Below, in pieces: positions 5,135 through 48,920 of a stretch of 64,000 nucleotides of DNA. The notes under the pieces were generated by a model that was given only the letters and a program-made list of their open reading frames with translations, made no database searches and was not told the DNA's origin. The position numbers and the translations under genes are program-made. The stretch is from IMG/VR virus record IMGVR_UViG_3300023199_000204, positions 124,001 through 188,000 of that record. One strand, written 5' to 3'. Each line of letters begins with the position of its first letter. Within the stretch, counting starts at the first letter, position 1.

Positions 5135-5143
5135 GAGGTTTTA

Positions 5144-10581: not shown

Positions 10582-11132
10582 TGAACATAACAATAACAGG
10601 TCATAGACCAGATACTTTTTTACAATCACATATAAGTGAATATTTAGCAAAAAAGAAAATATCTGATGTACTGGGAGGATTAAAAAGACAATATGGAAAG
10701 GACCTATCTTTTAATATAGGTGGAGCAATTGGTGTTGACCAGTGGGCAGGAACAGCCTGTGTTGAACAAGATATTAATTTTAAACTTTATTTACCTTTTA
10801 TTCCAAAAGTACAGTCAAAGTATTGGAAAAAAGAAGATGTAGAAGCACTTAATCTATTAATAGAGAATGCTAATTCTCTTACAATAGTTGATCCATCAGG
10901 CAATTATAATGTTTATCGCTATGAAGAAAGAAATAGATTAATGGTAGATAATTCTACATTTGTTGTAGCTTTTTGGTTGGGCAAGAAAAAGGGCGGAACA
11001 TTTAATTGTATAAAATATGCCTTAAACAAATCTAAATTTGTAGCTCACGGATTTGATAATTTAAGGTTATTGTTTAATGAAGATTTAAAATCTGGCTGGA
11101 CGCCTAACTTGGAGGAATTAAATGACAAATGA
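10581..11132 (+). CDS. YspA/DUF1273 SLOG-family protein
   Basis: ITITGHRP, GGAIGVDQW, RNRLMVDNS, GGTFNC. Confidence 0.85.
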   Translation: MNITITGHRPDTFLQSHISEYLAKKKISDVLGGLKRQYGKDLSFNIGGAIGVDQWAGTACVEQDINFKLYLPFIPKVQSKYWKKEDVEALNLLIENANSLTIVDPSGNYNVYRYEERNRLMVDNSTFVVAFWLGKKKGGTFNCIKYALNKSKFVAHGFDNLRLLFNEDLKSGWTPNLEELNDK

Positions 11133-11763
11133 AAATGTTCAGGCAGAATCTATTAATAAAAGCAAGTGGAATAAATATCCAGTCAACAATGATGTTGTTT
11201 TAGAGTGGATGAATGTTTGGGAAAATGGTTCTGAAGAAATCAAGAGAAAGACTGAAGAACTACTAATAAAAAAACTATCTTATTTGACTAACAAGATTGC
11301 CAGGAAGCATATAAACAAACACTATTACGAAGATATTCTAATGGAAGTTAAATTAGGTCTCATCTGTGCTTTAAGAGAATTTGATTCACAGAGGGGACCT
11401 AACTTTTTCAAATACGCTCAATGGAAAATGAAAAATAAAGTGAGGGATTTTATGAGCTGGTATATTAGGTCTAGCAAAAGATTTGAATATAAAAACTCAT
11501 CACTTTATGAAAATATAAAAACACCATGCGAAAAACTTGAAAAACAAGAACAACTACGGGCGCTTTTCAAAGCGCTCGATTTTTTATCAGATAGAGAAAA
11601 ATCGATTCTAAATTTAAGATTCGGGCTAGATGGTGGAGATCCAAAAGTATTAAGAGAAATAGGGGAAGTTTTTAACTTATCTAAAGAAAGAATCCGTCAA
11701 ATAGAGGTTGAGGCAATTAAAAAACTTAAGAAAGTAATAGAAATTAAAGATTTGGAGGACTAA
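11122..11763 (+). CDS. Sigma-70-family RNA polymerase sigma factor
   Basis: Region 2 (GLICALREFDSQRGPNFFKYA) and region 4 HTH (LNLRFGL...LREIGEVFNLSKERIRQIE). Confidence 0.9.
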   Translation: MTNENVQAESINKSKWNKYPVNNDVVLEWMNVWENGSEEIKRKTEELLIKKLSYLTNKIARKHINKHYYEDILMEVKLGLICALREFDSQRGPNFFKYAQWKMKNKVRDFMSWYIRSSKRFEYKNSSLYENIKTPCEKLEKQEQLRALFKALDFLSDREKSILNLRFGLDGGDPKVLREIGEVFNLSKERIRQIEVEAIKKLKKVIEIKDLED

Positions 11764-11768
11764 TTTGT

Positions 11769-34239: not shown

Positions 34240-34750
34240 CAGCCTCTCAAAACTTTCCTCTCCAGTATATAATCCCCCTCCGTAACGTCTCGAATTTATT
34301 AAGCTTTTTAAACCAATATATTCCCCTCCTAACTTCCCAATATTATTCAATAAATTAACCCACCAAATTAATACAAATAGCTAAATTCCAGCCTCTCAAA
34401 AAAATCAACCAAGCCGGGCTATAAGAATGTGATAAATATCTGTTTTTATTGTTGCTGATCATATAAGTAAATCTAATATAAACCATAAGCATAAAAGCAT
34501 TTCTCTCCTCCCTATCTCTCTTATATCTAATAACTCATAACCTCATTGCCACATATACATTAAGCTATATCTTACCCCTATTCTCTTCCTTTCCCCTAAC
34601 CTATACATATATATACATTATTAATCTTAAGAGCCACTTCTTACTTCTATCTTACTCCTTTCTCTATATATTAAACTTAATCTTAAGCTGTATGTTAAAC
34701 TTAATAGCTACATCTTACCCCTCCTATCCCTTTACATATATATACATAAA
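34240..34750. other. G-depleted non-coding junction, candidate genome end or origin
   Basis: 8 G in 240 nt at 34501-34740; TACATATATATACAT direct repeat at 34604 and 34733. Confidence 0.5.
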
Positions 34751-35210
34751 TTTACCGAACGGGGTGCCCCGGAGCCTCAACTTCAAAAGTTTCCCGCCTG
34801 GGTCCGTACTACATCACCCTACGTGTAAGATAATATCCTACATATAAATAACTCCCTGAAATTATTGATGAAAATATTTTTCCGTTTGAAAAACAATGGA
34901 TCGACGATTATATTAGGTTGAAAGCGGCAAGCTGTGTCGGCATGGCGCAGCAAGGGTGAGCAGGCACAGGGGGCGAGTGGGTGATACACACCTGAGCCCC
35001 CGCAAGAGACCCGAAGGGTCTCTGCTCCCCAAAAAACACAGTGCTGGGCGTTTGATTTATCCAGCACGACGCTTTTAGAAGGTTGAGAGCGTCGGCGTCT
35101 GCGTGGTGTAGGCGTCGTAATCCTGGCGGGATTTCCCGCCGCATACGGAACGGGGCCGGCTTAGGCATAAAGCCCCAAAAGATAGCGGGTAAAACCGCAA
35201 GGAGACTATC

Positions 35211-35720
35211 ATGAGTAAGTTCAGCATTTTCTTGGGAAGGGGAACGCAGATCAGCATCGCGAATACGAAGCTGCGCGAGAGCGTCGTCAGGGCAGCGGAG
35301 GAGCGCAACGTGGGGGAGGAGAAGCTCAAGGCGCAGCTGGATAAGCTGTGCAGCCCGGAGGATCGCGCGGAGTGCCAGTCCGTGTTGGAGGGAGGTGGGT
35401 CCGTGACCACGAGCCTCTACGATCTCAACGACCTTACCCCGGAAGTGCGCAAGAAGGCCGTGGCCTTCTTGCGCCAGCTGGCCAAGCAGGCGGGCAGCAA
35501 GGTTCGCGAAGTGCGGTTCACCGTGACGGCACCGAAGTCCGGAAAAGTCGTAGGTAAGTCGTCCGGCCTCAAGGGCATTCTCAACGCGCCGGTGACCATC
35601 ATGGGCGCCGAGCTTGAGCGCGCTGGCGCCAGCAAGTCGGACGGGCCGAGCGCCTTTGACTCGGCCATCGCCTCGATCCTCGGGTCCGAGGACACCGACA
35701 GCGAGACCGCCGACGCCTAG
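35211..35720 (+). CDS. GC-rich hypothetical protein, first gene after the junction
   Basis: AAGGAG RBS, strong G/C third positions, hairpin after stop. Confidence 0.85.
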   Translation: MSKFSIFLGRGTQISIANTKLRESVVRAAEERNVGEEKLKAQLDKLCSPEDRAECQSVLEGGGSVTTSLYDLNDLTPEVRKKAVAFLRQLAKQAGSKVREVRFTVTAPKSGKVVGKSSGLKGILNAPVTIMGAELERAGASKSDGPSAFDSAIASILGSEDTDSETADA

Positions 35721-36616
35721 ACTCTTCGGGGGCGCAAGCCCCCGACATTCCTACCTTTTTAAAGGGGCGGTCCCATTAACTTGGGGTCGCCCCTTTTCCC
35801 ATTCGAGCGCTAAATGCGTTTCTGCGTGTTCGAGCAAGGGATCGCCCACTGCTACGTCCCTAGACTTGTCTATGTGGGGGCGTATCAAATCTCGACATGT
35901 GCGGACGCATCCGCACCGTTCGACGATTACTGGCTGGTTCGCTAAGTCGACTCAGTCACACCTTTTGCCCGCTTTCCTTAATGGTTTGCGGGCTTTAGGT
36001 GTTCGAAGGGTTTTCTCCCTTCGAACGCAGATCTTAAACTTGCTTTGATGTTTCTTGGGAATAATCTCCCAGAAAGCATCATAACCAGCGTTGCGGTCGT
36101 CACGGCAGCAAAAGCAGGCAAGGGACAGTATGATGCCGCGATTCATCTCGTGGCTAAGTCTCTGGTTTTCCCCGACCACAACTCTTGGGGGAATGAGTGG
36201 AGTACTGCCTTCACTCACGCAACATTGGAGCTAGACTCCAATGATCACGGCAGGTTCTACCGCTAGCTAAGGTTCTTTTTGTTTCTTGGGCACCATAGGT
36301 GCCCTTTAAGCATTCGAGGAGACTTTCTCCAAAAAACAAAAGGGTTTATATCTCTACTTGACTTTAAAACGAGGGTAGGGTTCGTGAACCTAGGAAACTG
36401 TAAGCCTAATTACAGTGGGCGGGGGGCCTCACATTTCATAGTTATTTTTTTGAAAAGGTTCGTGTTAATTCTGGGAGCTATGGCTCCCTATAAGCATTCG
36501 AAAACCCACAAACAAGGAAGCTCCCAGTAGATGAGTTGAAGCGACTACTTAACTCTTAATGTTAATGTTTAGAGGGCACCATAGGTGCCCTTTAGGTATT
36601 CGAGAAAGGTAAAGCA

Positions 36617-36763
36617 ATGACCACTTTTATCACGGGCTTTCTGGTTGTGGGGATTGTATTCATTCAGAACCCAGCGAAATACTTTGATGTATGCGCTGGA
36701 TTCTTTGTGGGTTTGGTTTTCACTTTGATTATGGTTTTGGTTTTTGGAAACCAAAACCGATAA
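36617..36763 (+). CDS. Small membrane protein, 48 aa
   Basis: Read manually; two hydrophobic stretches; lies between two hairpin elements. Confidence 0.6.
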   Translation: MTTFITGFLVVGIVFIQNPAKYFDVCAGFFVGLVFTLIMVLVFGNQNR

Positions 36764-36860
36764 TTTTTTTCTGAAATTTTTTTTTGGAAAAGGGCGTATT
36801 AATCCTTCCAAGGGTTCACGCCCTATAGGTGTTCGAAAACACACAAACAAAGGAGCTATT

Positions 36861-37160
36861 ATGCTCACTCGGAAAGAGAAAGAAGAACTGTTGCGAAGGA
36901 TCCTAACCTTTCGCAAGGGCAAAGTGAACCTTCGGACGCAACGACCGAAAGGTCAGGATCAAGAATCACTGCGTGCGTACTTCGTGTGGCGCATGGCGAG
37001 ATTCCATGGTGGAGAAGATCTGAGCATGCCGATTCAGGCACTTCAGGTCATTGGAGATGACGAAGCGCTCCCCGACTTGAAGGAGATGGCCGACAAGCTG
37101 GCGAAGCGTTTCTTTGGGAGTGACATGCGAGCCGTCAATCGGTTCGAGGGTCTCTTCTAG
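36861..37160 (+). CDS. Hypothetical protein, paralog of 49629-49949
   Basis: AAGGAG RBS; shares MLT...RKG...YFVWR. Confidence 0.8.
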   Translation: MLTRKEKEELLRRILTFRKGKVNLRTQRPKGQDQESLRAYFVWRMARFHGGEDLSMPIQALQVIGDDEALPDLKEMADKLAKRFFGSDMRAVNRFEGLF

Positions 37161-37212
37161 GGGAGACATATACATCGGCAAAACACTTTAAGGGCACTTC
37201 GGTGCCCTTTAG

Positions 37213-37786
37213 GTGTTCGACAATACACAAGCAAAGGTGGCTATAGTGGTTGTCATCCGTCACGAAATTATCAACACCTTAAAGGGAGACTTTGAGGTTT
37301 TCTCGGGAAAGAATCCCGAGCAAGTGGCCTGGATTCTCTCTTACGTTAAGAGAGAGTTTAAGGGGCGACTGTTTCCAGCAACTCCTGGAAATCCTGACGG
37401 CATCGTCAGGAATGACCAGGGCGAGGAAATCGGCCTCTATACCTATGAGGCTCCTCCGTTTCGGCCTCGCAACTCCACGTGGCTATATGTGGAAATTCGG
37501 CTGTGAGCCATAGAGCCTTTACAGGTTTATATACTTTTGCCCACTTTCCTTAATGGTTTGTGAGCTTTAGGTGTTCGAAACCTCATAGTCAAGGAGAGTT
37601 GAAATGACTCAGAACCTGTATCAAATGACTCGTCGCCTCCATCGCAAAAGCCCGCAGCAGCTAAGGGCGTTGCTAAACAAGCTGGCGGTCATCGGTGCGA
37701 CCACGAAGACCAACGTCTCCGGCTACATGAGGGACGTGAGCCACATGATGGCTTGGAAACAAGTGGAGGGGCCGCACAAGCGATAG
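37213..37786 (+). other. Two small hypothetical ORFs (37213-37506, 37604-37786)
   Basis: One ORF per inter-hairpin interval; start of the first is uncertain. Confidence 0.6.
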
Positions 37787-38148
37787 GTCTGCGGGACTTA
37801 AACAAAACACTCACAGGCGCGCGGGATTATTTCCTTAGCGCCTTTGGGTGTTCGAAGAGCAGAGCCGGTTGGTCCCTGGTTCGAATCCTACTTCTCGGCT
37901 TCGAGGAAAAAAAGTTTGAGAAGTATGACTTCGGAATATAAACTTCTTTGATAAAAGGGTCTTCGGACCCTTTAGGTATTCGAAGGGCGTAAAGCTTAAT
38001 TGTTTAACTTGACAACTTAGCTTAACTACTTAACAATTTAATATCTTAATCTTACACCCTTCCTCTTAACTTAATGTTTCTTTTGCCAGTTGAAACTGGC
38101 AGCTAACCTCAACCCAGAGCAAGAATGCTCCAAACCAAGGAAAAAACA

Positions 38149-38511
38149 ATGAGCACGACCACGAACAAAATCATCGAGCAGGCGAAGTCGGCAATAGTGA
38201 ATGGTACGAAGATCGGCGCCAGCGTCAATCTCGGTCGTCAAATCACCAAGCTGGTTCGCGATTTCGCGGGAGCACACTACCCCGAGGCTTTCAACAGCCC
38301 GCTGTTCAAACAGGTGGAGCCGCTTCTGGTGGCTTTCATCGTCCAGGCTGCGACCACGGCATATCCGAATGTGCCGGGAGCGCAGAAGGCGAACAAGGTC
38401 GCTGGACTGGCAATGGTCGGTGAGGCTGCCCTTCTGACCCAGGAGCTGATGTCCAAGGTGGATGTGAGCACGCTGTTCCAGCGAGTGGCTGCTCTCGCTC
38501 CAACGGAGTAA
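38149..38511 (+). CDS. GC-rich hypothetical protein
   Basis: AAGGA RBS, high GC3. Confidence 0.8.
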   Translation: MSTTTNKIIEQAKSAIVNGTKIGASVNLGRQITKLVRDFAGAHYPEAFNSPLFKQVEPLLVAFIVQAATTAYPNVPGAQKANKVAGLAMVGEAALLTQELMSKVDVSTLFQRVAALAPTE

Positions 38512-38522
38512 GCAGGTATAAG

Positions 38523-38558
38523 GCTTCAACGGGGCCGCGGCTCGATGGCCGCGGTGAT
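38523..38558 (-). CRISPR. Solitary 36-nt CRISPR-repeat-like unit, type I-G (I-U)-like; no array
   Basis: Minus strand ATCACCGCGGCCATCGAGCCGCGGCCCCGTTGAAGC: 7-bp stem and TTGAAGC 3' end. Confidence 0.55.
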
Positions 38559-38636
38559 GCTTGTACCTTTCGAGAAACCGCCAGTGCGGTAGGCAGGTAT
38601 AAGAAACAAAAAAAACAACAAACAAAAGGAACTGCT

Positions 38637-39227
38637 ATGTTGAAACTAGGTTTTTCGGAGCTTGTGATTCACAAACGCTTTAACAAGGTCCTTCTCAACA
38701 AACTCAAGAAGTCAGAATACGAGTTCGGTCTTACGGGCTCGTACTTCTTCGGGACCTATCGCCCTGATAGTGACCTTGATCTCTTCGCCAAGGACTCGAA
38801 TGAAGTTCGTAGATTCCTCTACGAATGTAATTTTAATATCGAGTGGGAGGTGAATGGGTATGGGGACAAAAATACTGTCTTATTGTTAAGGCATCACTCC
38901 AATCCTCACATCGATGTTCAGTTGGTGCGGGACACCGCTGCCAAAAAGGATGTGGAGGAGAGGATCAAAAAGGAAACGGGTTGTTGGATCCTCACTCCCC
39001 AATGTGGTGAGACCAAGACCTCTATTTGCTTCAAAAAGCGGCGTGCTACTTTGTATGATATGCTGTATGGGCTGTATGTTTCGGGACACCCCGATTCGCC
39101 TCTTGCGCAGCATATCACAAATCGTTCAGACGTGCTGAACAAGAAGTTGGGTTTGGGTTCGGCACCCAGCGTCGCAGGGAGCAAGAAGGAAACACCAGCA
39201 CTCAAGGGATGGCCTTTCACGTCCTAA
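38637..39227 (+). CDS. Nucleotidyltransferase (pol-beta superfamily, MNT-like)
   Basis: LTGSYFFG...DSDLDL and third Asp in HIDVQ. Confidence 0.8.
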   Translation: MLKLGFSELVIHKRFNKVLLNKLKKSEYEFGLTGSYFFGTYRPDSDLDLFAKDSNEVRRFLYECNFNIEWEVNGYGDKNTVLLLRHHSNPHIDVQLVRDTAAKKDVEERIKKETGCWILTPQCGETKTSICFKKRRATLYDMLYGLYVSGHPDSPLAQHITNRSDVLNKKLGLGSAPSVAGSKKETPALKGWPFTS

Positions 39228-39249
39228 AAACAGGAGATAAAACCATTTT

Positions 39250-39322
39250 GGGCCCATAGCTCAGCGGTTAGAGCGTCGCTCTCATAAAGCGGGGGTCCCT
39301 GGTTCGAATCCAGGTGGGCCCA
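39250..39322 (+). tRNA. tRNA with CAT anticodon (elongator Met or Ile2); no encoded CCA
   Basis: Full cloverleaf, GGGCCCA/TGGGCCC, loop CTCATAA, GGTTCGAATCC. Confidence 0.95.
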
Positions 39323-39572
39323 AAGCAACAATTAATAAAAATAACGAAAGGAGCCAAACAATGCGATAATCTAATATTATTGAAGGAAAACATATATAGT
39401 GTCCTGGGGCTGCCCAACTTTAATAGGTTGGGCAGCCCTTTAGGCATTCGTGAACTTGGCGATATAGGTTAACTTGGTACGCGACAAGAGAATTGCGAAT
39501 TGCGAATTGCGAATTGCTAAGGATCATGGGGAAATTTCCTGGGGGTTTTCCCTGGGACGAAAGGACAGAATC

Positions 39573-39878
39573 ATGAAGACCATGAAGACCATCAGCAAAG
39601 ACATGATCAAAGAGTTGCAGGTCGGCGACGCCGTACTGGTCCTGACCAGCACGGCGCATTACTGGACAGGGAGGATCGTCTCTCTGTCCATGACAGAGAT
39701 CGCCCTCGACGAGGCGGCCTGGATCTCGCAGGTGGGCCGCCACAGCGACTGCGTCGCACGAGGAGACCTGAGTGGGGCTGAGATCGAGCCCCACGCTGAC
39801 GGGCAGATTACCAGGCTGCCTCGGATCGGCAGCGTGGTAGTGGACTGGATCCACGCGTTGCCGCGCGAGCAGCGCTAA
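39573..39878 (+). CDS. GC-rich hypothetical protein (Sm/SH3-like beta protein typical upstream of Ser/Gly-repeat phage genes)
   Basis: HYWTGRI...LDEAAWI...EIEP; AAGGA RBS. Confidence 0.75.
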   Translation: MKTMKTISKDMIKELQVGDAVLVLTSTAHYWTGRIVSLSMTEIALDEAAWISQVGRHSDCVARGDLSGAEIEPHADGQITRLPRIGSVVVDWIHALPREQR

Positions 39879-40270
39879 TGGACGATCTCGCAGGGGAGCT
39901 CGAGCAGCTGATGCGCGCTGGAGACGAGCGCGTGCTCACGGACTACATCGCCGAGCACGCGCTCGAGTGGCTGTGGCTGCCGGCGCCGACCCTTCCGCTG
40001 ATAGCGTGGTCTGGGCGGCTGTCGGGGTCGCGGTCGCGGTCGAGGTCGTGGTCGTGGTCGCTGTCGGGGTTGCGGTCGCGGTCGAGGTCGTGGTCGCTGT
40101 CGGGGTTGCGGTCGCGGTCGAGGTCGAGGTCGCGGTCGCGGTCGAGGTCGTGGTCGGGGTCGGGGTTGCGGTCGCGGTCGAGGTCGTGGTCGAGGTCGTG
40201 GTCGGGGCCGAGGCCGAGGTCGAGGTCGCGGTCGCGGTCGAGGTCGTGGTCGGGGTCGGGCTGGCTCTGA
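39878..40270 (+). CDS. Low-complexity (Ser-Arg/Trp/Gly)n protein
   Basis: TAATG coupling to upstream gene; C-terminal 80 aa of SR/SW/SG dipeptides. Confidence 0.75.
   Translation: MDDLAGELEQLMRAGDERVLTDYIAEHALEWLWLPAPTLPLIAWSGRLSGSRSRSRSWSWSLSGLRSRSRSWSLSGLRSRSRSRSRSRSRSWSGSGLRSRSRSWSRSWSGPRPRSRSRSRSRSWSGSGWL
40022..40261 (+). repeat. Tandem hexamer repeat, mostly TCG-NGG, about 40 units
   Basis: tcgcgg/tcgagg/tcgtgg/tcgggg seen directly. Confidence 0.95.
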
Positions 40271-40343
40271 CGTCGCGCGTGCCGGTATAGATACGATAGG
40301 AGGGGTTATGATTACTTTCGTATTTTTCTGACGGAGGTGAATC

Positions 40344-40478
40344 ATGCGCAAGACTCATAAAAAGATTGGTCCTGGCGGAGTGAAGTGTCCTTGCTGTAAT
40401 CCTTATGGTAAGGACATTAAGAAAAAGCTTAATCGTTGGGAGCGACGCAAGGTAAAACAAGAGCTTAAAACTTATTAG
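40344..40478 (+). CDS. Small basic protein, 44 aa, GPGGVKCPCC motif
   Basis: Read manually; GGAGGTG RBS. Confidence 0.75.
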   Translation: MRKTHKKIGPGGVKCPCCNPYGKDIKKKLNRWERRKVKQELKTY

Positions 40479-40503
40479 CTTATGGGGTGCTGTGAGAGTT
40501 TGG

Positions 40504-40706
40504 AAATGCTGGGAGGTAGGCTTAGAAGCAGCCAGCGGTGTTGAGCAAACCGCATACCTTTAAAGAGTAGCTCATACCCACTCTAGGTGAGTTTGACCGT
40601 GAAGGCTCGCGGAAACCTTGCCGGAGTTTAGGAGTCGGTCTAGAACGACTTTTAATGAAAACCAGGGTTGAGAAAATGCTTTTGGCGTAATAGCACACCA
40701 GTATTT
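40504..40706 (+). ncRNA. Candidate ncRNA mimicking the 23S rRNA L11-binding GTPase-associated centre (H43-H44) with two insertions
   Basis: Collinear blocks GCTGGGAGGTAGGCTTAGAAGCAGCCA / CCTTTAAAGAGT / GCGTAATAGCACACCAGT closed by 9-bp helix 40504-40512:40698-40706. Confidence 0.85.
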
Positions 40707-41150
40707 ATTGGAGTAAAAATCCTAAAGGTCGTTGGTCTTTCTCAAGACTACGACCTTTAGGCATTCGAGGACACTTTAGCGCGTATGGTTGGAAGGTTGG
40801 TATATACATTTAAGTGTTTGACTGTGTTGTGGAGCACCCCCCCCAATGAGATAAGGGACTTCAAGTTCTTTTCCTAAGTGTGTGGGACCGAAAGGTCAAA
40901 AACTAACACAGCGAGATCGGCGGAAGTATCACACGACTCCGCGCGGATCTCCATTTGGCGATAAAAAATAACAGAATAAGGATAAGCCCGGATACTTAAT
41001 TGTATTCGGGCTTTAGGTATTCGAGGAGCTTGTCTCCTAGAAATTGTTAGACCTTGTGAAGACCGCGGGGCGCCACTTCCCCCGGCCGGCAGACACGCCG
41101 GTGTTCTTCCGGCGGAAGAAATAGCGGTTAGCCGCTGAAAGGAAAGGTAC

Positions 41151-41891
41151 ATGCGACTCTCAATCAAGATGTCCAACATCGACGCGCTGTGCGAGGAGCT
41201 ATTGAAGCTCCCAGCCGGTGCACTCTTTCGCCACAACGACGCCGGTGACCTGCCCGCCGCAGGTCGCAGGCAGAAGTTTTTCTTCACTAACCGCGGGCAA
41301 GCCAAGACGGGATACTCGTACCGGACGCGCACGAGTCGCGGTAGTTGCCCGCGGTCGTGCCGTCTCTTCGATATCTGCTACGCTAGCGTTAATCCTCTCC
41401 GATGGTACTGGCAGCAACTCGGACGTTGGTACAAGCGCGGCGCGGAGTATCTCGATCACCGTACCGTGATCAAGCTCGCCAAGGCGGCTTCGCACCTGAC
41501 GGGTTGGACCTACACGCATTGGGACTGGAAGCGCTACTTGCGCACGTTCCTGCGCGGCAACGAGCTCGGGTTCACGATCAACGCGTCGACCGAGAGCCCC
41601 GAAGAGGCACTCGAGGCGTTCCGCGCAGGTCTGCCGGTCACACTCGTCGCTCCGCCCTTCGTGCGCAAGAAGATCATGCTCGAGGACGTGCCCGCCATCC
41701 CTTGTCCCGCGCTCCTGCAAAAGGGCTTCACATGCGACATGTGCGGCAAGGGTTCACCTCTGTGCGCCCGAGCCGACAGGCACTACATCATCCTGTTCCC
41801 CGCGCACGGCGCCAGAGCCCGAGCCGTGTGGAATCGCATCGCGAAGTTCTGGACGGACTTTCTGCCCGAAATGGAGGACGCCTGTGCCTAG
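41151..41891 (+). CDS. GC-rich Cys-rich phage protein (DUF7227/Gp88-like)
   Basis: RHNDAGDL, CPRSC...CYA, WTYTH, GFTINAS, CPA...CDMC...C, FPAHG. Confidence 0.65.
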   Translation: MRLSIKMSNIDALCEELLKLPAGALFRHNDAGDLPAAGRRQKFFFTNRGQAKTGYSYRTRTSRGSCPRSCRLFDICYASVNPLRWYWQQLGRWYKRGAEYLDHRTVIKLAKAASHLTGWTYTHWDWKRYLRTFLRGNELGFTINASTESPEEALEAFRAGLPVTLVAPPFVRKKIMLEDVPAIPCPALLQKGFTCDMCGKGSPLCARADRHYIILFPAHGARARAVWNRIAKFWTDFLPEMEDACA

Positions 41892-42193
41892 AAGAGACGA
41901 CGATGTGGGCTGGGCGGCCATCTAGAGTCTCACCTAAGTCGACGGGTGAAAAAAAATACCGTCCATACAAATCCGACTCATATGTTTCGCCCAAGTTCAA
42001 GTCGCACACTCACACTATGGGGGACATACCATAGGGCTACTGGCTTGCTATAAAGGAAACTAAGACGCTCGCGAGCGCATCTTTCCTTTACAGCAGCCAG
42101 TGGCCTTTTGGTGTTTCGACTGCCTTGGGCAAATGCGCGATAACGCGCGCGATATAGGGTTAAAGAAGTTTTAAATCATCATTATTCGAATAT

Positions 42194-42269
42194 GCACCCG
42201 TATCGGACAGGACTTCTAATCCTGAGCACCGTAATTGGATCGATGCAGGTTCGAGCCCTGCCGGGTGTA
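42194..42269 (+). ncRNA. Non-canonical tRNA-like RNA with Arg(TCT) anticodon hairpin and rearranged D-arm
   Basis: Acceptor GCACCCG/CGGGTGT, CAGGA-CTTCTAA-TCCTG only 7 nt after acceptor, T-arm GCAGG-TTCGAGC-CCTGC. Confidence 0.75.
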
Positions 42270-42331
42270 TTAAAGAAGAAGTTAAAGAGAGCCGAGCACA
42301 CAAAGAAGTTCCATTTACAACGAGGTGAATA

Positions 42332-43598
42332 ATGGAAATCTCCGCGCCAGCATTTATGCAAAAAGGATTGGTCTTTTTGATCGATCTAGGAGCCGACTGT
42401 AAAGAAGAGGTAATCTCTCACGAGATGGGGAGGAGCTTTTGGGGACCTGGTTTTTGGTGGAAGGTGGTAAAGGAGCTACGAAGCAGAGGATACGACATTT
42501 CTCCGGAAGACCTTGGGAGAACCATTGCCAAAATGTACTATGACTTTCGTCCCAACGAGATGATGAATGAGCAAATGGTATCCTATGGATACTCCCAGTG
42601 TTCGAAGTGTGAATTGAGGTATCTTAAACACAAGTTCAAAAGTCACGATCCGTGTGATAATTGCAAAGGTGGTGAATAGAGGTTTCGCAATTTCCGGGAC
42701 TTAGAAAAGGAGAGAATCAAAATGAATAATTTCAAGCGTCTCCGTAAAATCTCGAACACTATCGGCATTTCCCAAGTCAACATGGGAAAGACCGCAGAAG
42801 GGAATGGTCACGTCTCGGTTATTCTGAGAAATGGTCTTTCTATCCGTTCGGAATACGGACAGGGAGACTTTCAGAAAATCTGGTCGGCTATTCACGTATG
42901 GAAGAAGGCACAGGGTCTTCCGTTCTGTTACAACGGCAGTTCGCACGGCTTCGTGTCGCGACTTCGTAAAAAACAGCCGAAGCGAGTAAGAGATGTTTAA
43001 GTCAATTCGGGAGTGGGTTCGCAGAAGGAGAATCAATAAGAAAACAGCGCTGACGGCTTCACGGTTCAAGTGGCTTGGCCTTGAACTTATCAAGGTCTTT
43101 CCCAAGAATCACGATGGGACCGTAAGGATTACCGCGAAGGTCGTCGGCAAGCCAGTGGAATACATCGGAAAGGATTTCAACTTTCAAGGTCGCAAGTATA
43201 TCGTAAAGGATATGGAGTATGGAAAACTCTGTGATAGCATCGTTGGTCTTCGGTGTATAGACATGGGAAGAAATAGATAAGCTTGAAGGGCTTATATGAG
43301 CCCTTTCGGCATTCGAGGAGAAAAAAAGATTATGTTTTCAAACGATGACATTTGGGATTTCCTGAACTTGGAGAGGAATTTTCGCTATGTTGGAGGTCTT
43401 CTTCGTTTTCTAGAAGCACTTCCCGACAAGAAGAACTGTGCCAACCCAAGGGAGCCTGATTGTACGTCAGCTCGCTACATTGGGACTATCATTGTTCGTA
43501 ATGCTTATAATGCTTATAACGCGATGCGAGATGAGGAAAATATGACAAGGGACTGGGGCAACATCATAGATATGGTGTTGGCTTTTAACAACGAATAA
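42332..43598 (+). other. Four small hypothetical ORFs (42332-42679, 42722-43000, 42993-43280, 43332-43598)
   Basis: RBS-preceded open frames. Confidence 0.7.
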
Positions 43599-43787
43599 GG
43601 AGACAAACGATGTCTTTCAACAAAATCAAAAAGGAGTAAGAAATGGGATATATCTGTGCTCCAATTGTTGTGGTATATGTTGCGATTTTGTCAGCTTTGT
43701 GTCAGAAAAAAGAAGTGGACTCAATGAATAGATAGATAGATAGGTTTGCTATCCTTGAACAAACTACCTAATTAAAGGTAATAGAAA

Positions 43788-44024
43788 ATGAATTACGAAA
43801 AATATGAAGTAAGAGTATATACTGATGGAGATAAATATTGGTATCAAGAGGGAAAGCTTCATCGGACCGATGGTCCAGCAGTAGAATTTGCCAATGGAAC
43901 TAAACTTTGGTATATAGAAGGGAAAGAATATACTAAAAAAGAGTTCATTGAACTCTTGAAGAATGACTGTGATGGAAAGACCGTCGAAATCGACGGAAAG
44001 AAATACAAACTAATTCTTCAATAA
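43788..44024 (+). CDS. RTDGPA repeat protein, copy 2 (one unit)
   Basis: Shared MNYEKYEVRVY N-terminus and KTVEIDGKKYKLILQ C-terminus. Confidence 0.88.
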   Translation: MNYEKYEVRVYTDGDKYWYQEGKLHRTDGPAVEFANGTKLWYIEGKEYTKKEFIELLKNDCDGKTVEIDGKKYKLILQ

Positions 44025-44386
44025 GGAAAGACAAATGAGCAACAAAGTTACACCTCAAAAAAAACACATGCAATTCTTCGTTTGTAGTTGCGCGATCAAA
44101 TCAGCAATACTGAAGCGAAAATCGCTCAAATGAGCGAGAAAAAAAAAGCAAGGGTGTGCGAAAAGCCATTCGGCAAAACAAAAGGCAACTGCAAAAATTG
44201 AGAGAGCGCAAGCACGAAGTAGAGCAGCTTCAACGTTATTATGGCGACTAATTAGTAATTAATGGTGGGGGCATCTTAAATAAAGTTCTATAGGCTATCG
44301 GTCTTTTTAGACCCATGGCCTATAGGCATTCGAAAGGGTTTTGGCAATAAAACTCAAACTTGAGAGAAACCAAAAAGGAGAAAGAA

Positions 44387-45076
44387 ATGATTAACTTTGC
44401 CATTTATTCTCATAGCTCTCTGACTTCACTTCCTGTTGCCGATTTTGGTCCGGCGCTTCAAAGGATCAATAATTCTCCCTTTGAGTTCTGGCTCACGGGA
44501 AGTTTTTATTTCGGCAATTACACTATCGATAGCGACTTGGATCTCTACGTTGCTGACGAGAATGCCGTTCATCAGTTCATAATTTCGCTTGGCGGAGTTG
44601 TTCTTAATGGAGTCGCCGGCTATTCTGATTCGAATACCAAGCTCGTTTATAGAATCAAAAACCCAACAATAATGCTTCGGCACATTGACATCCAGATTAG
44701 CAAAGATGTAAAAAGGAAAAAATATCTAGAGCGCAAAATAATGTGTGGTGGTTCACTATACACTACTTTTATAAGTTTGGACAAGGGCGACCGTCGTTCT
44801 TTTTATAACTCCCTATATAGTTTGACTAGTTATAATGAGGAGGAGGAGAAGAAAAAACAACTGCCTTGGTATCATAATGGACAGTATCATCCAGCCGATG
44901 GTCGTCCAATAGCTGAGGGTCTATCTATGAAATCTATCGCATCGCGATCAATTGCCTCTCGCAAAGGTCAAACCATAAAGAAGCAAGATACTTGTACTAA
45001 TTGTGGTTCTCTTGGAGAGGATCTTATCTTCAAGTTCTATTGCTCCAATCCTTCTTGTTCTAACTACAAACCGTAA
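44387..45076 (+). CDS. Nucleotidyltransferase (MNT-like) with C-terminal zinc ribbon; paralog of 38637
   Basis: LTGSFYFG...DSDLDL, HIDIQ; CTNC...CSNPSC. Confidence 0.8.
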   Translation: MINFAIYSHSSLTSLPVADFGPALQRINNSPFEFWLTGSFYFGNYTIDSDLDLYVADENAVHQFIISLGGVVLNGVAGYSDSNTKLVYRIKNPTIMLRHIDIQISKDVKRKKYLERKIMCGGSLYTTFISLDKGDRRSFYNSLYSLTSYNEEEEKKKQLPWYHNGQYHPADGRPIAEGLSMKSIASRSIASRKGQTIKKQDTCTNCGSLGEDLIFKFYCSNPSCSNYKP

Positions 45077-45089
45077 AGGATGTTGGGAG

Positions 45090-45971
45090 ATGAAAAACAA
45101 AGCAGTAAACATCAACCCTGGAAGCCCTGAAGCTGTAAAGCGTGGCTGTAAATGTCCCGAGATAGACAATGGTTACGGAAAAGGTTATATAGGTGGTCGA
45201 TACGATCCGGAAACTGGTCAGGTGATGTATGTCACAAGCAGTGCCTGCCCACTTCATTGGGAAAACTAAGGAGAGAATAATGGCTCGTCGTAAAAACACA
45301 ACTCGAAAAGTTCTTTTTCTTTGCGTCTTCGCTCTGGCTGTCTTTGGTGGATGGTCTCTTTGGAAAGGACACGGAAAGAAGTGGTTCTTCAAGGGCAAAG
45401 CTCAGGTGGAGAAAGTCACGAAGGCAGTGAAGAAGAGTTTGAAGTAATTTAAGGAGTAAAAGATGGTCTCGGTAACAAAAGATATGATGGGAAAAATCAC
45501 TTTTCTCATTGGTCAGAAACTAACTCTACACTTTTTACTCAAGAGCGAGGTTACTCCGCGATTCAAAAATTGGGGATATTCTTCGGAAAAGTGTAAAAAC
45601 TACACTTCTTATGGTTTCGGACTTGGAAAGTTAGCTTTTTTGGTATATAATAAGCAGGTGAATTAATGAGAGTTAAGTTCCTGATGTTTGGAAATCTCAG
45701 TTGTCAGGGGAAGGCTTTTTCACAAGTAGATAAAGGATGGGCTATACTTCAAGCCCGTGTTTGTGATAATACTGTTGGTGAGTTAATCACTGATTGGGCA
45801 AACGATTACGAGATTTGGTTGTTTGGAGATAACCCTTGGCTTTGTTCTGGTTTGGAAGTTGAGAAAGCTTTGACAGAACAATTGGATTGTGAGTTTCTTG
45901 AGAAAGAAATTCTCAGACTCAATAAGCACGAGGGTTTGCCAGTTTACGGCTGGGTTGCTATTCACTCTTAA
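45090..45971 (+). other. Four small hypothetical ORFs (about 45090-45269, 45280-45447, 45463-45666, 45666-45971)
   Basis: RBS-preceded open frames; first has CKC...CPLH. Confidence 0.65.
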
Positions 45972-46115
45972 GTTTATGGGGCTCAATGAGCCCTATAGAT
46001 ATTCGAAGGGTGCTAGGTTTATAGTTTAACTTAACATTAATCTTAAATTCAGACTTAAAATTTAATATTTCATTCTAGCACCCTTCTTCTTAGCATAACT
46101 TTGCGAACTTTTTAT

Positions 46116-46197
46116 GCCGGAATGGTGAAATTGGTATACACGGGAGACTCAAAATCTCCTTCCTTCGGGAGCAGGGGTTCGACTCCCCTCTCCGGCA
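46116..46197 (+). tRNA. tRNA-Leu(CAA); no encoded CCA
   Basis: GGAGA-CTCAAAA-TCTCC, long variable arm, GGTTCGACT; one acceptor mismatch. Confidence 0.93.
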
Positions 46198-46296
46198 TCA
46201 AGGACAAGCTATATTGTAGAGAGTTATTAAGCTTTCATTGAAAGTTGTGAATAATGAGATCTGCTCACCTCGGATCCAAATTTTTAGAGGAGAATA

Positions 46297-46542
46297 ATGA
46301 CTAAAAACAGAACGAAGCTTCCTAAGTTCATTTGCCTTGGTTATAACTTTTCAGAAAACGAAATAATGCGTTTTGATTGTGTTGCTGAAACAAAAGAGAG
46401 GGCTGCTGAAAAAGCAAAGACCCGTCTAGTAAAAAGCATCGGAATGAATTAAGTTCATTATGATTGGTCAGTTTACAACGTTTCCAATGCGAAACTCTAT
46501 GATATATTTAATACCGAGTTGGTTTGGAAGGGAGACCAGTAG
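46297..46542 (+). pseudogene. Small ORF with in-frame TAA at 46450
   Basis: GGAG RBS; frame stays open 29 codons past the stop. Confidence 0.5.
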
Positions 46543-46841
46543 TTTGGTAAGTGATTTTAAATCCCGATAGGTTTTATTCCTTCGGGACTTAGCAGGAACT
46601 CAGGCTGCGAAATGACCTTGTTTTGTACTATCTTTTGGTGTAAGACCGCAAGCTGGGCTAGCCCGCTTACATTAGGATTGGTGAATATAAGTAATCATTA
46701 TTAGGGCTAAAGCCCAGCTGATGCCTACCTGAGTATGCTTATCGGCCCAAAAGGGCCTTTAAGCATTCGAAGACAGTAAAGATTAGAAAGAAAACATTGT
46801 TGGAGCAATTTTTACCACCCGACAGGCGCAAGGTTATAAAA

Positions 46842-47216
46842 ATGAATTACGAAAAATATGAAGTAAGAGTATATACTGATGGAGATAAATATTGGTATAA
46901 AGAGGGAAAGCTTCATCGGACCGATGGTCCAGCAATAGAATATGCTAGTGGAACTAAACAATGGTATCAAGAGGGAAAGCTTCATCGGACCGATGGTCCA
47001 GCAGTAGAATATGCTAATGGAGATAAATTTTGGTGGAAAGAGGGAAAGCGTCATCGGACCGATGGTCCAGCAGTAGAATATGCCAATGGAACTAAACTTT
47101 GGTATATAGAAGGGAAAGAATATACTGAGAAAGAGTTCAACGAACTCTTGAAGAACGATTGTGATGAAAAGACCGTCGAAATTGACGGAAAGAAATATAA
47201 ACTAATCCTTCAATAG
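46842..47216 (+). CDS. RTDGPA repeat protein, copy 3 (three units)
   Basis: 69-bp periodicity. Confidence 0.88.
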   Translation: MNYEKYEVRVYTDGDKYWYKEGKLHRTDGPAIEYASGTKQWYQEGKLHRTDGPAVEYANGDKFWWKEGKRHRTDGPAVEYANGTKLWYIEGKEYTEKEFNELLKNDCDEKTVEIDGKKYKLILQ

Positions 47217-47458
47217 GGAAATAAATGGAAAGCATCTCAACATTGATTGGCGCCATATGGCTAACAGCAATTTTTGCTTCAGCAATAAGTTGGTGTATTA
47301 GTTGCGTAAAATTGTGGCGTTGGGATAAACATCAGCAACGAAATATCTTTTAAAAGTGGGAGCCCATATGGGCTCCCTCGATTTGTTCGAGCTAATATAA
47401 GCTTGGCTTCTTTATATAAGGTTAAAAAATCACTTAACGCGTACAAAAGAGGGACAAT

Positions 47459-48276
47459 ATGAAAAATCTAGTTATTTTAATGATTTTACTTTCCTCTTGT
47501 GGGAGAACTGAAGTAAATCCTTCAAATTCCGTTATAGTTGTTGCGACTGATGGATATGTAGTTATTCCTACCACTTACACTTGTAAAGAGGATCTTTCAA
47601 AGGACTTTATTGAATCCAAAGAATTATGTCTTACTAATTATAAATGTAAAAATAAAGTTTTTACATTTTATATGACGTATTTTTGTTTGGATGGAGGAAC
47701 ATTTTGTTTCATTAGGAGAAGTCATAATCAAATTAAATGGAAGTCGTGGGTGTTATTTGTTAATTCACGATTTTGCGAACTTTCGAAAGATTTGAGGTTC
47801 AAGCCTTTAATGAACTTTTGGTTGCTTGGAAAGAACGAAGTTTTGATATTGGAAAAAAAATAAAAAAGGATTTAAATTAATTCCTTTTCAAAAGGCACCA
47901 AATGGTGCCTTTAAGTATTCGAAAGGGATTAAGCAATATGAAGCTTTGGCACATTGGAAAGAGACCTCCGTTCCCAAAACCTTTTAATCTTACTTTTATG
48001 AGCACTTCACGAACTGCTTGGATTCGACCTGGTAGGTCCGATATTAAATGCGGAGTTTTCCTTTCTCCTCGGCCCGATCTCGTTTCTAAAAATCATAATC
48101 GTGTTGGTAATGTTTATACCGTTGAAGTTCCTCGCAAAGTCATAAAGGCTATGGGAGGAATTTTAATTTACGACAATGCTCCTGAAATCATTATTGATGA
48201 TGAACATTGGGTTTATTGTCATTTTATTGGTAGGTCTAAAAAGTGGGAAAAGAAAATTGAAAACATTACTTTTTAA
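47459..48276 (+). other. Two hypothetical ORFs (47459-47863 with lipoprotein-like signal LLSSC; 47938-48276)
   Basis: Each directly downstream of a hairpin-TTCGA element. Confidence 0.65.
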
Positions 48277-48545: not shown

Positions 48546-48920
48546 ATGAATTACGAAAAATATGAAGTAAGAGTATATACTGATGGAGATAAATTTTGGT
48601 ATAAAGAGGGAAGTCTTCATCGGACCGATGGTCCAGCAGTAGAATATGCTAATGGAGATAAATTTTGGTGGAAAGAGGGAAAGCGTCATCGGACCGATGG
48701 TCCAGCAGTAGAATATGCCAATGGAACTAAACTTTGGTGGAAAGAGGGAAAGCGTCATCGGACCGATGGTCCAGCAGTAGAATTTGCCAATGGAACTAAA
48801 TTTTGGTATATAGAAGGGAAAGAATATACTAAGAAAGAGTTCAACGAACTCTTGAAGAATGACTGTGATGGAAAGACCGTCGAAATCGACGGAAAGAAAT
48901 ACAAACTAATTCTTCAATAG
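48546..48920 (+). CDS. RTDGPA repeat protein, copy 4 (three units)
   Basis: 69-bp periodicity. Confidence 0.88.
   Translation: MNYEKYEVRVYTDGDKFWYKEGSLHRTDGPAVEYANGDKFWWKEGKRHRTDGPAVEYANGTKLWWKEGKRHRTDGPAVEFANGTKFWYIEGKEYTKKEFNELLKNDCDGKTVEIDGKKYKLILQ

What the first reader, a model, noticed from the sequence alone, without database searches (positions are those of the whole stretch)
35761..47922. About 20 co-oriented 'hairpin-N8-TTCGA' elements partition the early region into single-gene cassettes
Seen: stems differ in sequence and length (4-nt loops to ~80-nt hairpins) yet keep pairing, including compensatory TATAGGC/GCCTATA versus AAAGGG/CCCTTT. In almost every copy exactly 8 nt separate the last stem C from TTCGA (9 at 42115). 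Most intervals hold one ORF or one RNA, some are empty, and two pairs are near-duplicates (35967/37539; 36288/36574). The U-tract is too short for an ordinary terminator. Known analogues: IS200/IS605 right ends (hairpin + fixed spacer + TCAA/TTCAA cut by an HUH enzyme), REP elements, integron attC sites, T4 PeSL shuffling cassettes and N4 hairpin promoters. Inference: a structure-plus-sequence site for gene-cassette capture/shuffling, RNA processing (TTCGA mimics a tRNA T-loop), or a phage-specific promoter. No cognate recombinase is visible in this window.
Basis: partly seen in the sequence, partly recalled or inferred. Interest (0 to 1): 0.8.

Follow-up and report, generated by a model that had tools for sequence, protein, structure and literature searches.

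The report
Hairpin-plus-box punctuation array in jumbo phage
A 12-kb stretch of an uncultivated 316-kb phage is cut into small gene units by about 20 same-direction copies of a GC-rich hairpin followed at a fixed distance by a 13-base box. This is most likely a terminator fused to a phage-specific promoter that also serves as a crossover point for swapping genes.

Summary
The box CTWTARGYRTTCGA (one mismatch allowed) occurs 17 times, all on the + strand between 35993 and 47922, against 0.3 expected. Three degenerate copies and one doubtful copy bring the total to 21. There are no other copies in 103 kb of the same contig. Each box follows a hairpin whose basal G:C pair is invariant, while the other pairs covary.

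Hairpin modules and downstream leader modules are found in different combinations around the box, which indicates recombination within it. GC content per unit ranges from 29 to 63% in a 30% GC genome. One 60% GC gene has its nearest relatives (62% identity) in 62% GC phage-like contigs, and the similarity is confined to the ORF.

My best reading (0.45) is a composite terminator plus non-sigma-70 promoter, the functional counterpart of the PeSL cassettes of T4-type phages, with gene shuffling as a by-product. No RNA data exist, so three rivals remain open: an RNA-processing site, an N4-like hairpin promoter, and a dedicated recombination site. No recombinase or phage RNA polymerase was seen in 103 kb, but a phage sigma factor gene is present.

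I class it as a new variant of a known kind, of moderate interest.

The parts
35764..35806 (+). degenerate element: 12-bp hairpin, 8-nt spacer TTTTCCCA, TTCGA
35967..36006 (+). canonical element (hairpin module shared with 37539)
   Evidence: (D9)
36288..36317 (+). canonical element (hairpin shared with 36574; leader shared with 41020)
   Evidence: (D8, D10)
36473..36501 (+). canonical element; the following unit has no gene
   Evidence: (D7)
36574..36603 (+). canonical element; ATG 13 nt after TTCGA
36792..36836 (+). canonical element with CA-rich leader family D7
37192..37220 (+). canonical element, cUUCGg loop
37539..37578 (+). canonical element, 93% copy of 35962-36007 with a compensatory change
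   Evidence: (D9)
37816..37855 (+). canonical element (TTTGGG variant), followed by a tRNA remnant
   Evidence: (D19)
37957..37983 (+). canonical element, cUUCGg loop, leader family D5/D11
38535..38573 (+). doubtful copy: hairpin, 14-nt spacer, TTCGA
39407..39451 (+). canonical element (TTCGT variant), 14-bp stem
40727..40768 (+). canonical element; the following unit is non-coding
40986..41024 (+). canonical element upstream of the 60% GC DUF7227 gene
42035..42119 (+). degenerate element: 71-nt hairpin, 9-nt spacer; upstream of a tRNA
43288..43316 (+). canonical element (TTTCGG variant)
44293..44333 (+). canonical element; stem extends into CCTATAGG
45979..46006 (+). canonical element (TATAGATA variant), leader D5/D11, then tRNA-Leu
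46744..46770 (+). canonical element
47358..47390 (+). degenerate element: hairpin, 8-nt spacer TCGATTTG, TTCGA
47894..47922 (+). last canonical element; ATG 15 nt after TTCGA, then a long unit with no further element
34240..35210 (+). head of the array: about 1 kb non-coding, made of a CT-rich repeat zone, a sigma-70-like TTGAAA-17-TATATT site at 34886-34914, and a train of about 9 GC-rich hairpins without the box
   Evidence: z = -5.1
11122..11763 (+). phage sigma-70-family factor gene; a candidate reader of the box (inference only)

Best explanation
Each element is a compact intergenic punctuation module with two halves.

First half: a GC-clamped hairpin followed by UUU, acting in the RNA. 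It ends or attenuates the upstream transcript and protects its 3' end.

Second half: the abutting box TWTARG-YR-TTCGA plus purines. I read this as a phage-specific, non-sigma-70 promoter or initiation box that restarts transcription at or within a few bases of the end of TTCGA. The next start codon or tRNA follows 13-165 nt later. It could be host core polymerase with a phage factor (a sigma-family gene lies at 11122-11763), or a phage polymerase not yet seen.

About 20 co-oriented copies of the same 14-20 bases also act as crossover points for the phage's general recombination. Genes, tRNAs and non-coding units are therefore gained, lost and swapped as ready-insulated expression cassettes, as described for the PeSL cassettes of T4-type phages.

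Shown: the anatomy, the statistics, stem covariation, the mosaic of modules, the GC heterogeneity, and the foreign homologue confined to one ORF.

Inferred: the terminator activity, the promoter activity, the position of the start site, and the recombination mechanism.
For: 1. There are 17 canonical copies against 0.3 expected, all co-oriented with the genes and strictly intergenic.
2. There are no copies in the other 91 kb of the contig that I read, as expected for one temporal class of signal.
3. Stems are kept by covariation with an invariant basal G:C pair. Two loops are cUUCGg, an RNA-specific stable tetraloop. Eight of 20 copies have an upstream A-tract pairing with the TTT. All of these are terminator-like.
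4. TTCGA is followed by purines (first base after TTCGA: A 10, G 8, C 2). The gap to the start codon can be as short as 13-15 nt, with the Shine-Dalgarno inside it. Hairpins begin directly at or after TTCGA in 36002, 36313, 41020 and 47386. Together these place an RNA 5' end at the box.
5. Genes with no element between them overlap or abut like operons, so the elements delimit transcription units.
6. The variable dinucleotide before TTCGA is always a flexible Y-R step (CA 8, TG 6, TA 5, never CG). CCTWTAGG and TTCGAA are near-palindromes. Both point to duplex DNA read-out.
7. Mosaic structure: the same hairpin occurs with different leaders (D9, D10), and the same leader with different hairpins (D5, D7, D8).
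8. Unit GC ranges from 29 to 63% in a 30% GC genome. DNA contigs from two samples span the GC jumps. The DUF7227 gene is 62% identical to genes in 62% GC contigs, over the ORF only.
9. Precedents: PeSL composite terminator/promoters with GGGC..GCCC stems and recombination between them (PMC2839356, PMC4122927), and single-block promoters for a phage sigma factor (PMC8948821).
Against: - There are no transcript data: no RNA run was listed.
- The box has no -35/-10 pair and matches no promoter consensus known to me.
- The phage sigma factor keeps a good region 4, which would predict a -35 element that the box lacks.
- No phage RNA polymerase gene was seen in 103 kb.
- Only three U follow the stem. 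The terminator scan flags just 1 of 21 elements.
- A simple terminator-next-to-promoter arrangement does not require the exact 8-nt register that is observed.
- Contigs of three DNA runs show no deletion or circle junctions at the elements. This is weak evidence, because contigs drop rare variants.
- No relative with the same elements was found, so shuffling is inferred only from within this genome.
Confidence: 0.45

Rival explanations
1. RNA punctuation site. One long transcript starts in the head region (the sigma-70-like site at 34886-34914). A host or phage endoribonuclease cuts it at each hairpin-plus-box, giving mono- or oligocistronic RNAs with protective 3' hairpins, like the RNase III sites of the T7 early transcript.
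For: The loops are RNA-type and the stems covary. The fixed 8-nt register between structure and box fits a single enzyme reading both. Hairpins start right after TTCGA, which would protect new 5' ends. A sigma-70-like promoter sits at the head. tRNAs and non-coding units lie inside the array. The phage encodes a PIN-PhoH fusion, a possible RNase/helicase, at 15721-16995.
Against: About 20 GC-clamped hairpins each followed by UUU, in series, should attenuate a bacterial polymerase. I know of no endoribonuclease with a 13-nt single-strand specificity. The Y-R step and the palindromic half-boxes suggest DNA read-out. The sigma-70-like hit is a single 10/12 match in AT-rich DNA, and such hits number 49 against 37 expected.
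Confidence: 0.17
2. N4/LUZ7-like hairpin promoter. The hairpin is extruded in the DNA and is itself part of a promoter read by a phage single-subunit RNA polymerase, possibly one carried in the virion, that transcribes only this region.
For: LUZ7 middle promoters are GC-rich hairpins (stem of 6 bp or more, loop 3-4 nt) about 15 bp upstream of a G start (PMC9163698). Here the first purine after TTCGA lies 14 nt after the stem. The spacer consensus TTTAGGTG is identical to positions -16 to -9 of SP6 promoters, read from the SP6 genome itself; the TTTAAG variant also occurs in SP6, and the last two spacer positions vary in both. The elements are confined to one 12-kb region, as N4 early promoters are.
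Against: Stems range from 5 to 28 bp and the loops are neither conserved nor at a fixed distance from the box. N4 polymerase reads loop and stem bases centred at -11 (PMC4496689). The cUUCGg loops argue for RNA-level selection. No single-subunit polymerase gene was seen in 103 kb. In the SP6 register the start site would fall on the 4th base after TTCGA, which is C in 6 of 17 copies.
Confidence: 0.12
3. Dedicated DNA recombination site. This would be a structure-plus-sequence site cut by a site-specific enzyme (integron attC-like or HUH-like), making the region a gene-capture array.
For: A variable hairpin sits beside a constant box at a fixed distance, with an invariant basal pair. In both near-duplicate pairs the homology ends exactly at TTCGAR (D9 and D10). 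The array contains single-gene and empty units, a decayed tRNA, and foreign-GC genes. GC falls along the array (Spearman rho -0.49, p = 0.02), as expected if new units enter at the head.
Against: No tyrosine, serine or HUH recombinase was seen in 103 kb. The stems are mostly perfect and lack the extrahelical bases of attC. There is no inverse-core sequence 5' of the stem (flanks). RNA-type loops are present. The box always sits at promoter distance from starts, with shared leaders. No circle or deletion junctions were seen (weak evidence).
Confidence: 0.1
4. Terminators only. This would be a class of intrinsic terminator or attenuator whose conserved tail is a pause or release signal, with no restart.
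For: The base of the stem is GC-rich, it is followed by UUU, an upstream A-tract is present in 8 of 20 copies, and the elements sit right after stop codons.
Against: Twenty terminators in series would silence the distal genes. Conservation peaks at TTCGA, 9-13 nt past the stem, beyond the usual release point. The element is not used after any of the roughly 150 other genes in the 103 kb read.
Confidence: 0.08

Closest known systems
PeSL (promoter-early stem-loop) cassettes of T4-type phages (PMC2839356, PMC4122927)
   Same: Both are intergenic composite modules combining a GGGC..GCCC-type stem-loop (terminator/attenuator) with a promoter. Both are concentrated upstream of orphan genes in a plastic region. 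Both are repeated in one orientation and used as crossover points, so that genes move as insulated cassettes.
   Different: The PeSL promoter is a sigma-70 type -35/-10 with an AT-rich upstream region, and the stem-loop sits in five different positions relative to it. Here there is no -35/-10. The box is a single 13-nt block, and the stem is in one fixed register (8 nt). The phage is not shown to be T4-like.
N4 virion-polymerase and LUZ7 hairpin promoters (PMC4496689, PMC9163698)
   Same: A GC-rich hairpin with a 3-4 nt loop lies a fixed short distance upstream of a purine start, and the elements are confined to one region of the genome.
   Different: N4 and LUZ7 hairpins are short (stem lengths of 4 to about 7 bp are reported) and of nearly constant size, with conserved loop and stem bases read by the enzyme. 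Here only the basal pair is constant and stems reach 28 bp. No such polymerase was seen.
Integron attC sites
   Same: The sites vary in length and sequence but keep a folded structure plus a short conserved sequence. The arrays are co-oriented and made of mostly single, promoterless-looking ORFs.
   Different: attC has paired core sites (RYYYAAC / GTTRRRY) forming the base of the stem, extrahelical bases, and an adjacent intI/attI/Pc platform. None of these is present here. Here the conserved box lies outside the stem.
IS200/IS605 ends and REP/RAYT elements
   Same: A hairpin lies beside a short conserved sequence at a fixed offset from its foot.
   Different: Those systems have distinct left and right ends or inverted REP pairs, a conserved hairpin sequence, and a Y1 HUH gene. 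Here all copies are identical in type and orientation, the hairpin sequence is free to vary, and no HUH gene was seen.
T7 early-region RNase III processing sites
   Same: Hairpins between successive genes in a block of small genes leave upstream RNAs with 3' hairpins.
   Different: RNase III cuts inside long imperfect stems and needs no flanking box. Here most stems are 5-14 bp and the conserved part is single-stranded.
SP6/T7-type and phiEco32 gp36-type single-block promoters
   Same: Both are contiguous conserved blocks of about 9-19 nt with the start site at or just past the block. The spacer consensus TTTAGGTG is identical to SP6 positions -16 to -9.
   Different: The 3' half (TTCGA against ACACTATA) differs. 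No matching polymerase was found. The phage sigma factor found here has a region 4, unlike gp36 (PMC8948821).

Membership tests
PeSL composite terminator/promoter (T4-type phages) | Stable GC-rich stem-loop within the intergenic module | tested here: met
   All 21 elements have one, and the basal pair is G:C in 20 of 20.
PeSL composite terminator/promoter (T4-type phages) | Sigma-70-like -35 and -10 hexamers with an AT-rich upstream region | tested here: not met
   The sigma-70 scan gives no consistent hit at the elements. There is no conserved -10 downstream or -35 upstream of the box.
PeSL composite terminator/promoter (T4-type phages) | Located upstream of orphan genes in a plastic region and used as recombination points | tested here: met
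   The genes are orphans. Hairpin and leader modules form a mosaic. A foreign homologue matches one ORF only. Recombination is inferred, not observed (one search shows no junctions).
PeSL composite terminator/promoter (T4-type phages) | Promoter and terminator activity demonstrated | not testable with these tools
   No RNA run was listed.
N4-type hairpin promoter | Short hairpin (5-7 bp stem, 3-nt loop) with its centre at a fixed distance from the start site and with conserved loop and stem bases | tested here: not met
   Stems are 5-28 bp and loops 3-6 nt of varied sequence. Only the foot of the stem is in a fixed register.
N4-type hairpin promoter | Cognate T7-family (virion) RNA polymerase gene | tested here: inconclusive
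   None was found in 103 of 316 kb. The rest was not read.
Integron attC | Core sites RYYYAAC and GTTRRRY pairing at the stem base, with extrahelical bases | tested here: not met
   The conserved box TWTARGYRTTCGA lies 3' of the stem. The 5' flank pairs with at most 5 nt of it. The stems are mostly perfect.
Integron attC | Adjacent intI tyrosine recombinase with attI and Pc | tested here: not met
   No integrase was found in the 1-kb head region or in 103 kb around it.
IS200/IS605 and REP/RAYT | Y1 HUH transposase gene, and distinct left/right ends or inverted REP pairs with a conserved hairpin sequence | tested here: not met
   All copies have one type and one orientation and the hairpin sequence varies. 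No HUH family appears in the Pfam tables for 103 kb.
Canonical intrinsic terminator | GC-rich hairpin directly followed by a U-rich tract (at least 5 T in 8) | tested here: inconclusive
   The hairpin criterion is met. The tail is TTT followed by AGGYRTT, so the scan flags only 47358-47377. A-tracts are present upstream in 8 of 20 copies.
SP6/T7-type single-subunit polymerase promoter | Contiguous conserved block from about -17 to +1 or beyond, with an AT-rich 5' part and a purine start | tested here: inconclusive
   A block of 14-17 nt is followed by purines, and TTTAGGTG is shared with SP6. The register does not fit, and no polymerase was seen.
tRNA T-loop mimic | TTCGA within a 7-nt loop closed by a 5-bp T-stem | tested here: not met
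   The bases flanking TTCGA do not pair (alignment). Rfam at E of 0.1 or less finds only the six real tRNAs.

The most novel reading that the evidence does not exclude
The array is a phage-borne gene-capture platform. The hairpin with its invariant G:C foot, together with the box, is the substrate of a still-unseen site-specific enzyme that cuts just after TTCGA. New single-gene cassettes taken from unrelated, much GC-richer genomes enter at the head of the array next to the 1-kb non-coding region. This would be a functional analogue of an integron in a virulent jumbo phage.
Probability: 0.1. Interest if true: 0.9.

Novelty: new variant of a known kind. Interest (0 to 1): 0.55.

Why it matters
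If the reading holds, modular gene shuffling through repeated terminator/promoter cassettes is not peculiar to T4-type phages. It would have arisen separately in an unrelated uncultivated 316-kb phage, in a much more regular form: one register and one 13-nt box.

It would also define a new promoter class that could be used to annotate transcription units in this phage group. The array would be a natural record of genes being taken up across a 30-point GC gap.

The fixed geometry makes the element easy to test in a reporter. Once closer relatives are sequenced, the element will also be easy to search for in them.

Tried and rejected
- **RNA evidence.** No RNA run holding the region was listed, so no ends could be mapped.
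- **Strain variation.** Contigs of three DNA runs were laid on 35761-41700. The sequence is identical, with no joints at any element. The only joints and excess depth are in the hexamer repeat at 39.9-40.3 kb and at the tRNA.
- **Relatives by DNA.** There is no near match in GenBank phages. The 16-mer CCCTTTAGGYRTTCGA in IMG/VR is multi-copy only on the window's own contig. Among the 168 foreign hits, the frequency of an upstream hairpin is what chance predicts (6 at -12.8 kcal/mol or below against about 8 expected). The few two-hit loci are unrelated repeats.
- **Relatives by protein.** The nucleotidyltransferase cassette gene has no homologue. A profile of its two paralogues finds only generic minimal nucleotidyltransferases. 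A 452-kb relative (about 50% protein identity, 45% GC) is syntenic with window 17.5-28 kb. Synteny then ends, and the 12 kb of it that I read beyond that point (large, tightly packed genes) carry no box and no window homologues.
- **Host.** A genome scan with the DUF444 protein found nothing.
- **Ideas rejected.**
  - T-loop mimic: there is no T-stem.
  - CRISPR-like repeat: the hairpin sequences differ.
  - Sigma-70, sigma-54 and ECF-type bipartite promoters: there is no second conserved block at any spacing.
  - Assembly chimera as the cause of the GC island: single contigs from two samples span the junctions, and the box occurs on both sides.

Full report
**Source and setting.** The window is positions 124001-188000 of a 316,473-bp metagenomic contig (IMG/VR UViG_3300023199_000204, also named Ga0256419_1000024). 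It is a large phage, with genes for DnaB, PhoH fused to a PIN domain, ribonucleotide reductase, ThyX, an amidase with a peptidoglycan-binding domain, and PrkA/DUF444/SpoVR interrupted by inteins. All genes are on the + strand and GC is about 30%. No cultured phage is close. A 1-kb non-coding region at 34240-35210 ends a long operon. The stretch from there to about 42 kb is 45-63% GC. Single contigs from two independent DNA samples run across the GC jump, so this is not an assembly chimera.

**The observation.** The pattern CTWTARGYRTTCGA with at most one mismatch occurs 17 times, all on the + strand between 35993 and 47922. Shuffled sequence gives 0.30. A weight matrix gives these 17 copies 22.7-27.8 bits, and nothing else in 64 kb exceeds 10.8 bits. 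An unsupervised repeat search finds the same family (D3). Three more copies keep the hairpin, the spacing and TTCGA but have a divergent spacer: 35802 and 47386, plus 42115 with 9 nt. A fourth, at 38569, is doubtful. No copy occurs in a further 39 kb of the same contig read on either side of the window. The exact 16-mer that matches 3 of the 17 copies has no other hit anywhere on the contig.

**The hairpins.** Every box is preceded by a hairpin whose G/C stem ends 8 nt before TTCGA. Stems have 5 to 28 pairs and loops 3 to 6 nt. Mean energy at that position is about -12 kcal/mol, against -4.8 (sd 4.4) at random positions. The basal pair is G:C in all 20 copies. Pair 2 is GC 17 / CG 3, pair 3 is GC 11 / CG 7 / TA 1, and pairs 4 and 5 are mixed. 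The structure, not the sequence, is therefore what is kept. The near-duplicates at 35962 and 37534 differ by one compensatory G:C to A:T change (D9). Two loops are cUUCGg, an unusually stable tetraloop in RNA, which argues that the hairpin works in RNA. Eight of 20 copies have A residues 5' of the stem that pair with the TTT, as in many intrinsic terminators.

**Relation to genes.**
- The elements are strictly intergenic.
- Upstream ORFs stop 4-45 nt before the stem.
- The next start codon or tRNA begins 13-165 nt after TTCGA, usually with a good Shine-Dalgarno sequence.
- Genes with no element between them overlap or abut each other.
- The three bases after TTCGA are purines in most copies.
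- In four copies a hairpin begins at or right after TTCGA. This is what one expects if an RNA 5' end lies there.
- Some units contain no ORF: 36313-36497, 36497-36599 and 40764-41020.
- One unit holds only a decayed tRNA 3' half (37866-37900, D19).
- Others hold a tRNA.

**Evidence for exchange at the box.** Sub-families of the repeat share either the hairpin side or the leader side, but not both. The hairpin at 36288 recurs at 36574 with a different leader. The leader after 36313 recurs after 41020 behind a different hairpin. The hairpin at 35967 recurs at 37539 with another leader. A CA-rich leader carrying the Shine-Dalgarno sequence is shared by 36497, 36832, 37216 and 37574. A long AT-rich leader is shared by 37979 and 46002 (D5-D11). 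In the two near-duplicate pairs the similarity stops exactly at TTCGAR.

Unit GC ranges from 29 to 63% and falls along the array (rho -0.49, p = 0.02). The 60% GC DUF7227 gene (41151-41891) has its best relatives, at 56-62% identity, in 62% GC phage-like contigs. One of these was binned with a Myxococcales genome. The similarity covers the ORF only, and those contigs carry no box. Other cassette genes have no detectable relatives.

**What reads the box?** It is not a sigma-70 type promoter, because there is no second conserved block at any spacing.

The variable dinucleotide before TTCGA is always a pyrimidine-purine step (CA, TG or TA, never CG). CCTWTAGG and TTCGAA are near-palindromes. I take both as hints of read-out on duplex DNA.

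The phage encodes a sigma-70-family factor at 11122-11763, with region 4 at E = 1.7e-15, a weak region 2, and TIGR02937 at 76.8 bits. Single-block promoters are known for a phage sigma factor, but that factor lacks region 4 (PMC8948821). The assignment is therefore open.

The 8-nt spacer consensus TTTAGGTG is identical to positions -16 to -9 of SP6 promoters, as read from the SP6 genome itself; the TTTAAG variant also occurs there and the last two positions vary in both. However, the 3' halves differ and the SP6 register would put the start on a base that is often C.

No RNA polymerase gene and no recombinase appear in the 103 kb of the contig for which I have Pfam tables or my own scans. The other 213 kb were not read.

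**Mechanism.** I commit to a composite terminator/promoter module at confidence 0.45. The hairpin plus UUU ends and stabilises the upstream RNA. The box restarts transcription at about the end of TTCGA. The roughly 20 direct repeats of the box make the region recombine, so that insulated expression units are gained, lost and reshuffled.

This is how PeSL cassettes of T4-type phages are described. There, promoter and terminator activities and mini-circles formed by exchange between neighbouring cassettes were demonstrated (PMC2839356, PMC4122927). The element here works like a PeSL but is not a member of that family. The defining sigma-70 promoter is absent, and the stem is in one fixed register rather than five.

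**Rivals.**
- RNA processing site in one long transcript (0.17). It explains the fixed register and the RNA-type loops. It needs an unknown nuclease and read-through of 20 terminator-like hairpins.
- N4/LUZ7-like hairpin promoter (0.12). The geometry resembles LUZ7 middle promoters (PMC9163698). Stem length and loops vary too much for loop-reading as in N4 (PMC4496689).
- Dedicated recombination site (0.10). It is attractive because of the attC-like logic, the sharp homology ends and the GC gradient. However, there is no enzyme, no attC or HUH hallmarks, and the stems carry RNA-type features.
- Terminators only (0.08). This would silence the distal genes.

**Limits.**
- No RNA run was listed.
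- The DNA runs are contigs and show no variants.
- Searches of IMG/VR and metagenomes for the box found only chance single hits.
- The one syntenic relative I could follow (452 kb, 45% GC) loses synteny at about window 28 kb, and the 12 kb of it that I read beyond that point carry no box and no window homologues.
- All statements about function are therefore inferences from anatomy.

Noticed in passing
window 11122-11763: Phage-encoded sigma-70-family factor of 213 aa. Region 4 is RpoD-like and region 2 is weak.
   Followed up: partly
window 34915-35210: Train of about nine consecutive GC-rich hairpins without the TTCGA box, lying between a sigma-70-like site (34886-34914) and the first GC-rich gene. 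Folding z-score is -5.1.
   Followed up: partly
window 34240-34760: CT-rich non-coding zone with ATCTTAC-type and ACATATATATACAT repeats. A related CT-rich motif recurs in the long leaders at 38035-38074 and 46059-46098.
   Followed up: no
window 34900-42100: Island of 45-63% GC inside a 30% GC genome. Contigs from two samples span its left edge.
   Followed up: partly
window 39951-40301: Hexamer-periodic (GGTCGN)n repeat inside ORF 39878-40270, with long ORFs on the opposite strand too. It attracts many unrelated metagenome contigs.
   Followed up: no
window 37866-37900 and 42194-42269: A decayed tRNA 3' half, 18 nt identical to tRNA-Met at 39294-39311, lies directly after an element. A sixth tRNA is seen by Rfam (39.8 bits) but not by ARAGORN.
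   Followed up: partly
window 40479-40726 and 46453-46743: Two structured non-coding stretches of 250-290 nt inside cassettes (z -2.6 and -2.2). Neither matches any Rfam family.
   Followed up: partly
window 1925-14849: Inteins with LAGLIDADG endonucleases interrupt PrkA, SpoVR (two inteins) and ribonucleotide reductase. A free-standing LAGLIDADG ORF lies at 20857-21945.
   Followed up: no
window 43788-44024, 46842-47216, 48546-48920: Family of MORN-repeat genes with a shared C-terminal domain, 74-92% identical at the DNA level.
   Followed up: no
L182 3387-4820 (contig 117.5-118.9 kb): Tubulin/FtsZ-family gene (PhuZ-like) 5.2 kb upstream of the window. A sialic-acid/nonulosonate sugar biosynthesis cluster lies further upstream (L188).
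   Followed up: no
window 15721-16995: PIN-PhoH fusion (PhoH2 type), a possible RNA helicase/nuclease.
   Followed up: no
L157 1821 and 4580: An unrelated 64% GC metagenome contig carries two copies of a longer repeat that happens to contain CCTTTAGGTGTTCGAAA, with conserved flanks and no hairpin.
   Followed up: no
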